A DNA stretch of 64,000 nucleotides from Saccostrea echinata (Eukaryota): the NCBI RefSeq assembly GCF_033153115.1, contig NW_026889803.1, positions 15,872,001 to 15,936,000 on the forward strand. The letters run 5' to 3'. Under the pieces are notes generated by a model. It was not told where the DNA came from. It was given only the letters and a program-made list of their open reading frames with translations, and searched no databases. Positions 29,864 to 29,955 of the stretch are shown here, one piece after another. Made by a program: the position numbers and the translations under genes. Each line of letters opens with the position of its first letter. Position 1 is the stretch's first letter.

Positions 29864-29955
29864 AAGGAATTCATTTCTTCAAACTGTCAATCTCTTGAAA
29901 GTTTAAAATAAACTTTTATCAAGAGCATATCATCGGAAAGAGATGAATTTCTTTA
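29864..29955 (-). promoter_or_regulatory. SECIS element (type II) in the MsrA 3' UTR
   Basis: Minus strand: helix I AAGAAAUUCAU/AUGAAUUCCUU; core AUGAU (29933-29929) / UGAC (29889-29886); helix II AU(G)CUCUUGA/UCAAGAGAU; unpaired A run (29917-29914) 12 nt after AUGA; apical ministem GUUUA-UUU-UAAAC. Confidence 0.88.

What the first reader, a model, noticed from the sequence alone, without database searches (positions are those of the whole stretch)
29864..29955. Canonical type II SECIS ~440 nt downstream of the MsrA stop
Seen by hand-folding the minus strand: lower helix, AUGA/GA kink-turn quartet (UGAU/UGAC), ~9-bp upper helix with one bulge, unpaired A run 12 nt after AUGA, and an apical ministem. 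An AATAAA follows at 29779-29774. Finding this independently of the UGA makes a chance stop codon very unlikely.
Basis: partly seen in the sequence, partly recalled or inferred. Interest (0 to 1): 0.8.

Follow-up and report, generated by a model that had tools for sequence, protein, structure and literature searches.

The report
Oyster MsrA selenocysteine insertion hairpin (SECIS)
A 92-base RNA hairpin in the tail of an oyster methionine-sulfoxide-reductase mRNA has the hallmarks of the signal that makes ribosomes read a UGA stop codon as selenocysteine; it is an ordinary new example of a well-known element.

Summary
On the minus strand, 29955-29864 folds (-23.9 kcal/mol, z -4.26, 0 of 200 shuffles as stable) into a lower helix, an internal loop with AUGA (29933-29930) opposite GA (29888-29887), a 9-bp upper helix with one bulged G, unpaired As 12 nt after AUGA, and a ministem.

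It lies 439 nt after the TAA of a four-exon MsrA gene whose catalytic codon is TGA (35996-35994). Spliced RNA contigs run through it to 29766, just past the AATAAA at 29779-29774.

- It is the only SECIS-like site in the 629-nt 3'UTR. Only 5 of 2000 shuffled UTRs gave any site.
- A covariance model built from 12 other SECIS elements of this genome ranks it first in the whole window: 20.4 bits, E about 0.15, next 16.5.
- Rfam SECIS_1 misses it, but also misses a control SECIS downstream of a TGA-containing GPx gene.

Weak points:
- The core's 3' side reads UGAC, outside the published KGAW consensus.
- The opposite strand folds even better.
- No orthologous UTRs could be fetched.

Verdict: very likely (about 0.85) a working type II SECIS, a new member of a known kind. 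The scan had already noted the gene itself on this window (s1-803038).

The parts
29864..29955 (-). Whole SECIS-like stem-loop (92 nt)
   Evidence: MFE fold. Scanner hit (Etot -21.0, upper part -10.2 kcal/mol). The fold is unchanged in a 150-nt context.
29937..29953 (-). Helix I, 5' strand
   Evidence: pairs with 29864-29880, 15 pairs with two A.C mismatches.
29864..29880 (-). Helix I, 3' strand
29930..29933 (-). AUGA, 5' half of the kink-turn core (quartet)
   Evidence: Sequence. Aligned to the invariant AUGA of model R2. AUGA is present in 17 of 17 aligned SECIS rows.
29886..29889 (-). UGAC, 3' half of the core (GA at 29888-29887). The last base, C, is off the KGAW consensus.
   Evidence: The consensus is quoted from PMC3753652, section 4.
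29919..29928 (-). Helix II, 5' strand (G 29926 bulged)
   Evidence: In the R2 alignment no pair is flagged as non-standard, with one inserted base.
29890..29898 (-). Helix II, 3' strand
29914..29917 (-). A run (AAAA). The first two or three As are unpaired and start 12 nt after AUGA.
   Evidence: spacing d=11 counted after AUGAN.
29899..29913 (-). Apical ministem and loop (helix III), which makes the element type II
   Evidence: 7 predicted pairs (two of them use the last As of the run) around a 3-nt loop.
29766..30394 (-). 3'UTR as covered by RNA contigs (629 nt)
   Evidence: X1 and X2 each hold a 547-nt contig over 29766-30312 with 0 mismatches. An X3 contig of 1285 nt joins exons 1-4 and runs on to 29798. 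There is no depth below 29766.
29774..29779 (-). AATAAA, the likely poly(A) signal, 84 nt after the SECIS
   Evidence: Contigs end 8 nt after it.
29952..29957 (-). Second AATAAA at the 5' foot of the SECIS (possible alternative poly(A) signal)
   Evidence: the UTR holds only two AATAAA, starting at 29957 and 29779. No contig ends just after the upstream one.
30395..30397 (-). MsrA stop codon TAA
   Evidence: The three oyster stub proteins end at the same residue.
35994..35996 (-). In-frame TGA at the catalytic Cys position (S-U-FWFPEAQFG), 1015 mRNA nt before the SECIS
   Evidence: Ten metatranscriptome-like contigs have the same motif with TGA.
30395..30472 (-). Exon 4, coding part
   Evidence: Joint; AG|G acceptor.
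30955..31099 (-). Exon 3
   Evidence: Joints; GT and AG sites.
31884..32135 (-). Exon 2
   Evidence: Joints and loose end.
35893..36047 (-). Exon 1, coding part (ATG at 36047-36045)
   Evidence: GTAAGT follows 35893. The loose end at 32135 matches the exon 1 end. The four coding parts sum to 630 nt, which is 209 codons plus the stop.

Best explanation
The hairpin at 29955-29864 (minus strand) is the SECIS element of a selenocysteine-containing MsrA mRNA of the oyster. The 118-aa stub protein that is 100% identical over the part of my exon-2 query it covers is named Saccostrea echinata.

Inferred mechanism, from established knowledge of eukaryotic Sec decoding:
1. The AUGA/GA tandem sheared pairs form a kink-turn that binds SECIS-binding protein 2.
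2. That protein recruits the Sec-specific elongation factor carrying Sec-tRNA.
3. The UGA 1015 nt upstream in the mRNA (35996-35994) is then read as selenocysteine, the catalytic residue, instead of ending a 17-residue peptide.

Shown here: the fold and motifs, the position in a transcribed 3'UTR, uniqueness within the UTR, and the fit to other SECIS elements of the same genome.
Inferred, not shown: protein binding and recoding.
For: 1. Anatomy. AUGA, a 9-bp helix II with one bulge, As 12 nt after AUGA, a ministem, GA, an internal loop and a 15-pair helix I. z is -4.26 and 0 of 200 shuffles fold as well.
2. Need. The gene has TGA at the catalytic position, followed by 191 in-frame codons over four exons. 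Contigs of 4 of 4 laid runs are spliced at the two junctions inside the laid stretch, both with GT..AG ends. The exon 1/2 join shows only as a loose end that matches the exon 1 end.
3. Place. Contigs cover the UTR through the element down to 29766, after the AATAAA.
4. Uniqueness. There is 1 scanner site in the UTR. 5 of 2000 shuffled UTRs have any site and 0 of 2000 have one as stable.
5. Model R2 was built from 12 SECIS-like elements of this genome, without this one: GPx x2, SelenoP x2, Sep15, SelK, DIO x3 and 3 of unknown gene. It ranks the element first of 15 matches in the window at 20.4 bits, E 0.15 per 128 kb, with no pair flagged as non-standard. Scaled to the UTR, that is roughly 7e-4.
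6. Background. The top R2 score is 16.9 bits in 100 kb of arbitrary genomic DNA, and one likely false match scores 18.5 bits.
7. Relatives. In ten cDNA-like contigs encoding S-TGA-FWFPE MsrA, R2 finds 3'UTR matches of 40.3, 30.8, 30.8, 26.1, 19.4, 12.8 and 9.7 bits. The oyster score lies inside the range for this family.
8. The 201 nt around the element are single copy in the genome, so it is not a dispersed repeat.
9. An allelic contig (X3) differs at 7 bases and 3 indels within this UTR, all within 30192-30364 and none in the element.
Against: - Rfam SECIS_1 gives no match at E<=10.
- My first model R1 (7 seeds) missed the element with default filters. With filters off it scored only 14.8 bits, at noise level for the window.
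- The R2 margin over the best background match is only 1.9 bits, and its E-values are rough.
- Among 17 aligned SECIS rows, this is the only one with U after AUGA and the only one with C after GA. C lies outside the KGAW consensus.
- The opposite strand folds better: -40.3 against -30.2 kcal/mol for the same 150 nt. Stability alone therefore says nothing about strand or function.
- A second AATAAA lies at 29957-29952.
- Contigs cannot show strand, true 3' ends or isoform shares.
- No orthologous UTR was compared.
Confidence: 0.85

Rival explanations
1. It is a chance AU-rich hairpin that happens to carry AUGA, a run of As and GA. The real SECIS would lie elsewhere, or the UGA is a true stop and the gene is decaying.
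For: - No Rfam SECIS_1 match.
- R1 scored it at noise level.
- C after GA and U after AUGA are each unique among 17 aligned elements.
- The scanner finds about 1 site per 36 kb of real oyster DNA.
Against: - It is the only site in the UTR, and 5 of 2000 shuffles give any site.
- It is the top R2 match in the window and lies above all background seen in about 430 kb of strand.
- The mRNA is expressed and spliced, with an intact frame after the UGA.
- The other R2 match in the UTR scores only 12.4 bits.
Confidence: 0.08
2. It is a hairpin of another kind: a remnant of a foldback or MITE-type transposon, or a precursor of a small RNA made from the opposite (+) strand, with the SECIS motifs incidental.
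For: - The + strand folds more stably, -40.3 kcal/mol with z -5.47, with a nearly perfect long stem.
- cmscan gives weak + strand matches to plant miRNA hairpin families at 19-21 bits, all far below their thresholds.
Against: - The sequence is single copy in the 923-Mb assembly at E<=10. Caveat: that search skips very common words.
- The miRNA matches are far below their gathering scores of 35 to 140 bits.
- Contigs tie the region to the spliced minus-strand MsrA mRNA.
- The AUGA, AAAA and GA motifs at the right spacing exist only in the minus-strand reading.
Confidence: 0.04
3. It is a working SECIS whose use is gated. The AATAAA at its 5' foot would let alternative polyadenylation make SECIS-less transcripts, so that Sec-MsrA output is tuned by poly(A) site choice.
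For: The UTR holds only two AATAAA, and one lies exactly at 29957-29952, directly before helix I.
Against: - No contig ends or branches just downstream of it.
- The 547-nt contigs of X1 and X2 run through it uninterrupted.
- Contigs drop rare forms, so this is weak evidence either way.
Confidence: 0.03

Closest known systems
Eukaryotic type II SECIS elements (Rfam RF00031 SECIS_1; the SECISearch3 model, PMC3753652)
   Same: - Located in the 3'UTR.
- Same layout: helix I, internal loop, AUGA/GA kink-turn core, helix II of about 9-11 bp, unpaired As 11-12 nt after the core, and an extra apical helix.
- The definitions were read in PMC3753652, sections 4 and 5.
   Different: - The 3' core reads UGAC rather than KGAW, and the base after AUGA is U. 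Each is 1 of 17 in my alignment.
- Helix I is long, with 15 pairs.
- No match to RF00031 at E<=10.
SECIS elements of other selenoprotein genes in the same genome (GPx, SelenoP x2, Sep15, SelK, DIO x3)
   Same: Same architecture. 14 of 15 model pairs are standard by my own count and none is flagged by cmsearch. The score against their joint model R2 is 20.4 bits.
   Different: Training members score 32.5-47.4 bits, though they match by construction. Under the smaller model R1, held-out members scored 26.6, 23.4, 18.9, 15.4 and 14.9 bits, against 14.8 for this element.
Sec-containing MsrA of marine invertebrates and algae (Jiang et al. 2012, PMC3473315, passages read)
   Same: - UGA at the catalytic Cys, and a SECIS in the 3'UTR.
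- The paper reports Sec-MsrA as widespread in marine invertebrates.
- Ten metatranscriptome-like contigs share the S-U-FWFPE motif.
   Different: - That paper found no MsrA selenoprotein in its one mollusc, Lottia gigantea.
- Here the SECIS lies 439 nt after the stop. In the three contigs where my scanner found one, it lies 33-87 nt after the stop.

Membership tests
Eukaryotic SECIS, type II | Lies in the 3'UTR of an mRNA with an in-frame UGA at a Sec/Cys position | tested here: met
   TGA at 35996-35994 in S-U-FWFPE. Contigs join the exons and run through the element to 29766.
Eukaryotic SECIS, type II | AUGA on the 5' side and GA on the 3' side, placed to form the tandem G.A/A.G quartet | tested here: met
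   AUGA at 29933-29930 and GA at 29888-29887, bracketing helix II. The non-Watson-Crick pairing itself cannot be tested with these tools.
Eukaryotic SECIS, type II | Core consensus UGAN/KGAW (PMC3753652, section 4) | tested here: not met
   The 5' side UGAU fits UGAN. The 3' side is UGAC: K=U fits, W=C does not. C at that position is 1 of 17 aligned rows, and one other row has G. This is a consensus, not an invariant; the invariant GA is present.
Eukaryotic SECIS, type II | Helix II of defined length, with conserved unpaired As about 10-13 nt after the core | tested here: met
   9 bp with one bulge. The As start 12 nt after AUGA. The numeric limits in my scanner are recalled, because the pattern definitions sit in supplements that are closed.
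Eukaryotic SECIS, type II | Additional apical helix (helix III) after the unpaired As | tested here: met
   7 predicted pairs around a 3-nt loop in the MFE and centroid structures.
Eukaryotic SECIS, type II | Helix I below an internal loop; stable overall fold | tested here: met
   15 pairs; internal loop of 3 nt and 5 nt; -23.9 kcal/mol, z -4.26.
Eukaryotic SECIS, type II | Scores as a member with a curated covariance model (Rfam RF00031, gathering score 35 bits) | tested here: not met
   No match at E<=10. Controls under the same conditions: the GPx SECIS gives no match, Sep15 16.2 bits, SelenoP 24.7 bits. Genome-wide there were 4 matches at E<=10, with 129 of 20344 candidates scored. The test has little power here.
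Eukaryotic SECIS, type II | Scores as a member with a model built from SECIS elements of the same genome | tested here: inconclusive
   R2: top of the window at 20.4 bits, E 0.15 per window and about 7e-4 per UTR. Background maxima are 16.5, 16.9 and 18.5 bits. R1 gave only 14.8 bits. This is supportive, but not significant without the prior that restricts the search to the UTR.
Eukaryotic SECIS, type II | Conserved, with compensatory changes, in orthologous mRNAs | not tested
The metagenome scan gave only distant relatives.
Eukaryotic SECIS, type II | Binds SBP2 and drives UGA recoding | not testable with these tools
   Needs a reporter assay, a binding assay or 75Se labelling.
Sec-containing MsrA (PF01625 PMSR) | PMSR domain with UGA in place of the catalytic Cys of the GCFWG-type motif | tested here: met
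   All 29 homologues found with the exon-2 query carry PF01625. The TGA sits in S-U-FWFPEAQFG. Ten relatives have the same motif with TGA.

The most novel reading that the evidence does not exclude
The oyster MsrA SECIS is a working variant whose kink-turn core carries a U.C pair instead of the usual U.U or U.A pair (3' UGAC). It also has a poly(A) signal abutting its 5' foot. Sec insertion into MsrA could then be deliberately weak, or switched by poly(A) site choice. That would be a built-in regulator of selenium use, not a plain constitutive SECIS.
Probability: 0.06. Interest if true: 0.5.

Novelty: new member of a known kind. Interest (0 to 1): 0.25.

Why it matters
- It completes the case that this oyster gene is a real selenoprotein. 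A UGA at the catalytic site plus a plausible SECIS in the same transcript means the 118-residue public annotation is a truncation, not the product.
- It is a worked example of how the curated Rfam model fails on bona fide-looking molluscan SECIS elements, while a model built from the genome's own elements recovers them. That is useful for re-annotating bivalve selenoproteomes.
- Biologically it is expected. Sec-MsrA was already reported in marine invertebrates (PMC3473315). The Pacific oyster selenoproteome is reported as 32 genes, cited in PMC8557442. The primary paper is not held, so I could not see whether MsrA is listed there.

Tried and rejected
- **Rfam cmscan** gave no SECIS family, only sub-threshold snoRNA and miRNA hairpin matches. 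I rejected it as a refutation after the controls.
I relaxed the internal-loop rule. The rule was therefore tuned with the candidate in view, and the shuffle and background counts used the tuned version. The energy cut-offs (-12.6 and -3.7 kcal/mol) and the 10-13 nt spacing are recalled from the SECISearch literature, not taken from a call. The pattern definitions are in supplements S1 and S4 of PMC3753652, which are closed.
- **Alignments.** MAFFT alignments A1 and A3 were out of structural register and were not used.
- **Model R1** (7 seeds, one row misaligned) generalised poorly. A genome-wide search with it returned only 6 of its own 7 seeds, with 150 of 176857 candidates scored.
- **Alignment A5** was discarded because it held a likely false match in L014 that lacks a 3' GA.
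- **Seeds of uncertain standing.** L032 is probably misaligned in A6 and A8. L013 has CGAG at its 3' core. The genes of L001-L003 are unknown: Pfam found nothing in 7 of 8 upstream ORF pieces and one weak DUF4149 match in the eighth.
- **Pfam Rdx** gave no match in the genome. The **MsrB** matches had no TGA. The **TrxR** last exons were not resolved.
- **Metagenome scan** returned no oyster orthologues. Of 80 loci:
  - 10 are cDNA-like S-TGA-FWFPE contigs;
  - 54 have a stop at the G-x-FWG position (codon not checked; many sit on long contigs, so probably prokaryotic);
  - 5 have Cys;
  - 1 was a spurious motif hit;
  - 10 showed no motif.
- **Literature.** Searches found no paper describing an oyster MsrA SECIS. 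One search (MsrA, selenoprotein, SECIS, oyster) found 0 papers. Baclaocos et al. 2019 is not held.
- **Spliced model.** The joined spliced protein was never built or searched. Exon 2 was searched alone, and the database stubs P0015, P0017 and P0019 were used for the later exons.

Full report
**What is there**

Read on the minus strand, 29955-29864 is a 92-nt stem-loop. From the base upward it consists of:
- helix I, 29953-29937 paired with 29880-29864 (15 pairs, two A.C mismatches);
- an internal loop of 3 nt on the 5' side and 5 nt on the 3' side;
- AUGA at 29933-29930 facing UGAC at 29889-29886;
- helix II, 29928-29919 paired with 29898-29890 (9 bp, G 29926 bulged);
- U plus four As at 29918-29914, so the As begin 12 nt after AUGA;
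- a ministem with a 3-nt loop, 29915-29899.

The minimum-free-energy and centroid structures agree, at -23.9 kcal/mol. Shuffles average -12.8 +/- 2.6 (z -4.26), and 0 of 200 fold as well. The same fold appears inside a 150-nt context.

**The gene it serves**

The minus strand carries a four-exon MsrA gene. The coding parts are 36047-35893, 32135-31884, 31099-30955 and 30472-30395. All introns are GT..AG, and the coding sum is 630 nt, or 209 codons plus TAA.

Codon 18 is TGA (35996-35994), in S-U-FWFPEAQFG. That is the position of the catalytic Cys.

A database protein that is 100% identical over the part of my exon-2 query it covers is a 118-residue stub named 'peptide methionine sulfoxide reductase-like [Saccostrea echinata]'. 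Similar stubs exist for Crassostrea gigas and Ostrea edulis, and all three end at the same residue.

I re-derived the UGA, the splice sites and the expression myself.

**Is the element in the mRNA?**

Four runs that hold the UTR were laid on 29300-32300.
- Their contigs skip 30473-30954 and 31100-31883 with GT..AG ends on the minus strand, so they are RNA-derived.
- One X3 contig (1285 nt) joins exon 1 to exon 4 and continues to 29798.
- X1 and X2 each have a 547-nt contig covering 29766-30312 with no mismatch.
- Nothing lies below 29766, which is 8 nt after the AATAAA.

The element is therefore inside the transcribed 3'UTR of 629 nt. Contigs cannot prove the strand, the true end or the isoform shares.

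The X3 allele differs at 7 bases and 3 indels within this UTR, all within 30192-30364 and none in the element. With about 1.5 differences expected by chance in 92 of 676 nt, this is only weakly informative (my arithmetic).

**More than chance?**

I wrote a SECISearch-like scanner. It requires AUGA or GUGA, AA 10-13 nt after the core, GA, helix II, helix I and energy cut-offs. The cut-offs are recalled, not read from a paper.
- After one relaxation made with the candidate in view, it finds 1 site in the UTR, the candidate.
- 5 of 2000 dinucleotide shuffles of the UTR give any site, and 0 of 2000 give one as stable.
- Real DNA is a harder control. There are 6 other sites in the window's 128 kb of strand and 3 in 200 kb of strand from ten arbitrary genomic regions. 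That is roughly 1 per 36 kb, or about 2% for one UTR.
- The scanner also recovered all 4 genome-wide Rfam SECIS_1 matches and found elements downstream of a TGA-containing GPx gene, Sep15, SelK and one DIO gene.

**Model tests**

Rfam SECIS_1 gives no match to the candidate at E<=10, in either a 6-kb or a 301-nt search.

I therefore ran controls under identical 301-nt conditions:
- the element 290-380 nt downstream of a GPx gene with in-frame TGA gives no SECIS_1 match;
- the Sep15 element scores 16.2 bits;
- SelenoP SECIS 1 scores 24.7 bits.

All are below the 35-bit gathering score. Genome-wide, the family gave 4 matches at E<=10, with 129 of 20344 candidates scored. The genome nonetheless holds at least three GPx exons and three DIO genes with in-frame TGA, plus SelenoP. 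The Rfam miss therefore carries little weight.

I then built models from this genome's own elements, never including the candidate.
- R1 (7 seeds) missed the candidate with default filters and scored it 14.8 bits with filters off.
- Under R1, held-out elements scored 26.6 (SelK), 23.4 and 18.9 (two DIO), 15.4 (GPx) and 14.9 (DIO) bits. R1 could not discriminate.
- R2 (12 seeds, alignment A6) with filters off over the whole window ranks the candidate first of 15 matches. It scores 20.4 bits, E about 0.15 for 128 kb, with no pair flagged as non-standard and one inserted base. The next match scores 16.5 bits.
- Background with R2: the top score is 16.9 bits in 100 kb of arbitrary genomic DNA. One likely false + strand match near a DIO gene scores 18.5 bits.
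- Scaled to the a-priori search space of one strand of a 629-nt UTR, the E-value is about 7e-4. It is rough by a factor of about five.

**Relatives**

A metagenome scan with the three oyster stubs returned 80 loci. Ten are short, intron-less contigs that encode S-TGA-FWFPE MsrA, with about 190-205 codons after the TGA in nine of them; L053 stops after 91.

In their 3' parts, R2 finds + strand matches of 40.3, 30.8, 30.8 (L049 and L053 align identically), 26.1, 19.4, 12.8 and 9.7 bits. It finds none in 3 of 10. My scanner finds a 3'UTR site in 3 of 10.

So mRNAs of this MsrA type do carry 3'UTR SECIS-like elements, and the oyster score lies within their range. These are not orthologous UTRs, and no covariation test of the oyster element itself was possible.

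**What speaks against**

- In the 17-row alignment (16 other elements plus this one), the candidate alone has U after AUGA (C in 12, A in 4). It alone has C after GA (U in 13, A in 2, G in 1).
- The published core consensus is UGAN/KGAW (PMC3753652, section 4), so the C is off-consensus. The three RNA runs that cover it (X1-X3) show the same base.
- The + strand of the same 150 nt folds more stably (-40.3 against -30.2 kcal/mol), because two A.C mismatches become G.U pairs there. Hairpin stability alone therefore cannot assign strand or function. The SECIS motifs exist only in the minus-strand reading.
- The 201 nt around the element are single copy in the assembly. That argues against a dispersed foldback element.
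- A second AATAAA sits at 29957-29952. No contig ends after it.

**Conclusion**

The most likely reading (about 0.85) is a functional type II SECIS that lets the UGA 1015 nt upstream be read as the catalytic selenocysteine of MsrA. Binding of SBP2 and recoding are inferred from the established mechanism, not shown.

This is a new member of a known kind. Sec-MsrA is reported as widespread in marine invertebrates, though absent from the one mollusc examined (PMC3473315, passages read). The Pacific oyster selenoproteome of 32 genes is published; I saw only the citation in PMC8557442, and the primary paper is not held. Interest is modest.

Noticed in passing
L003:1488-1577 (-), G000:C7 about 6011615-6011677: A strong SECIS-like element (Rfam 29.8 bits, scanner Etot -24.7) overlaps the end of a 135-aa open frame (L003:1555-1959). 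Further upstream frames look retroelement-like to my eye. This recalls the selenoprotein-encoding Naiad Penelope-like elements of clams, whose SECIS sits right after the stop codon (PMC8557442). Pfam found nothing in the ORF.
   Followed up: partly
L004:1489-1576 and 2002-2090 (-), G000:C2 about 5819700-5820300: Two SECIS elements about 500 nt apart lie downstream of SelP_N matches at C2:5821770-5822428. The intervening frames are rich in D and in stops. This is the expected SelenoP 3' end with two SECIS elements.
   Followed up: partly
L063-L128 (metagenome contigs): 54 of 80 loci from the MsrA scan have an in-frame stop at the G-x-FWG catalytic position. Many sit on long contigs, so they are probably prokaryotic Sec-MsrA genes. 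I did not check the codon identity.
   Followed up: no
window 61907-62011 (-): My scanner reports a SECIS-like site with Etot -21.9 and an irregular helix II. R2 does not list it at E<=10, so it is probably chance.
   Followed up: partly
window 30728-30802 (-): A tRNA-like match of 23.4 bits (gathering score 29) lies inside intron 3 of MsrA. It may be a tRNA-derived repeat.
   Followed up: no
window 27454-27544 (+): A hairpin with weak matches to miRNA precursor families (MIR9486 at 30.6 bits, E 0.0031, gathering score 100). It may be an inverted repeat.
   Followed up: no
window about 32400-33800: Intron 1 of MsrA holds a run of similar short open frames on both strands, recurring roughly every 160-170 nt (for example the frames starting MKYIRKIF). 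This suggests a tandem repeat array.
   Followed up: no
G000:C23:5008015-5016482 and C9:7578574-7579272: Three single-exon deiodinase-like genes each carry one in-frame TGA. Two of them lie in tandem on C23, and a fourth partial match lies nearby. R1 and R2 find SECIS-like elements 160-215 nt downstream of the two C23 genes.
   Followed up: partly
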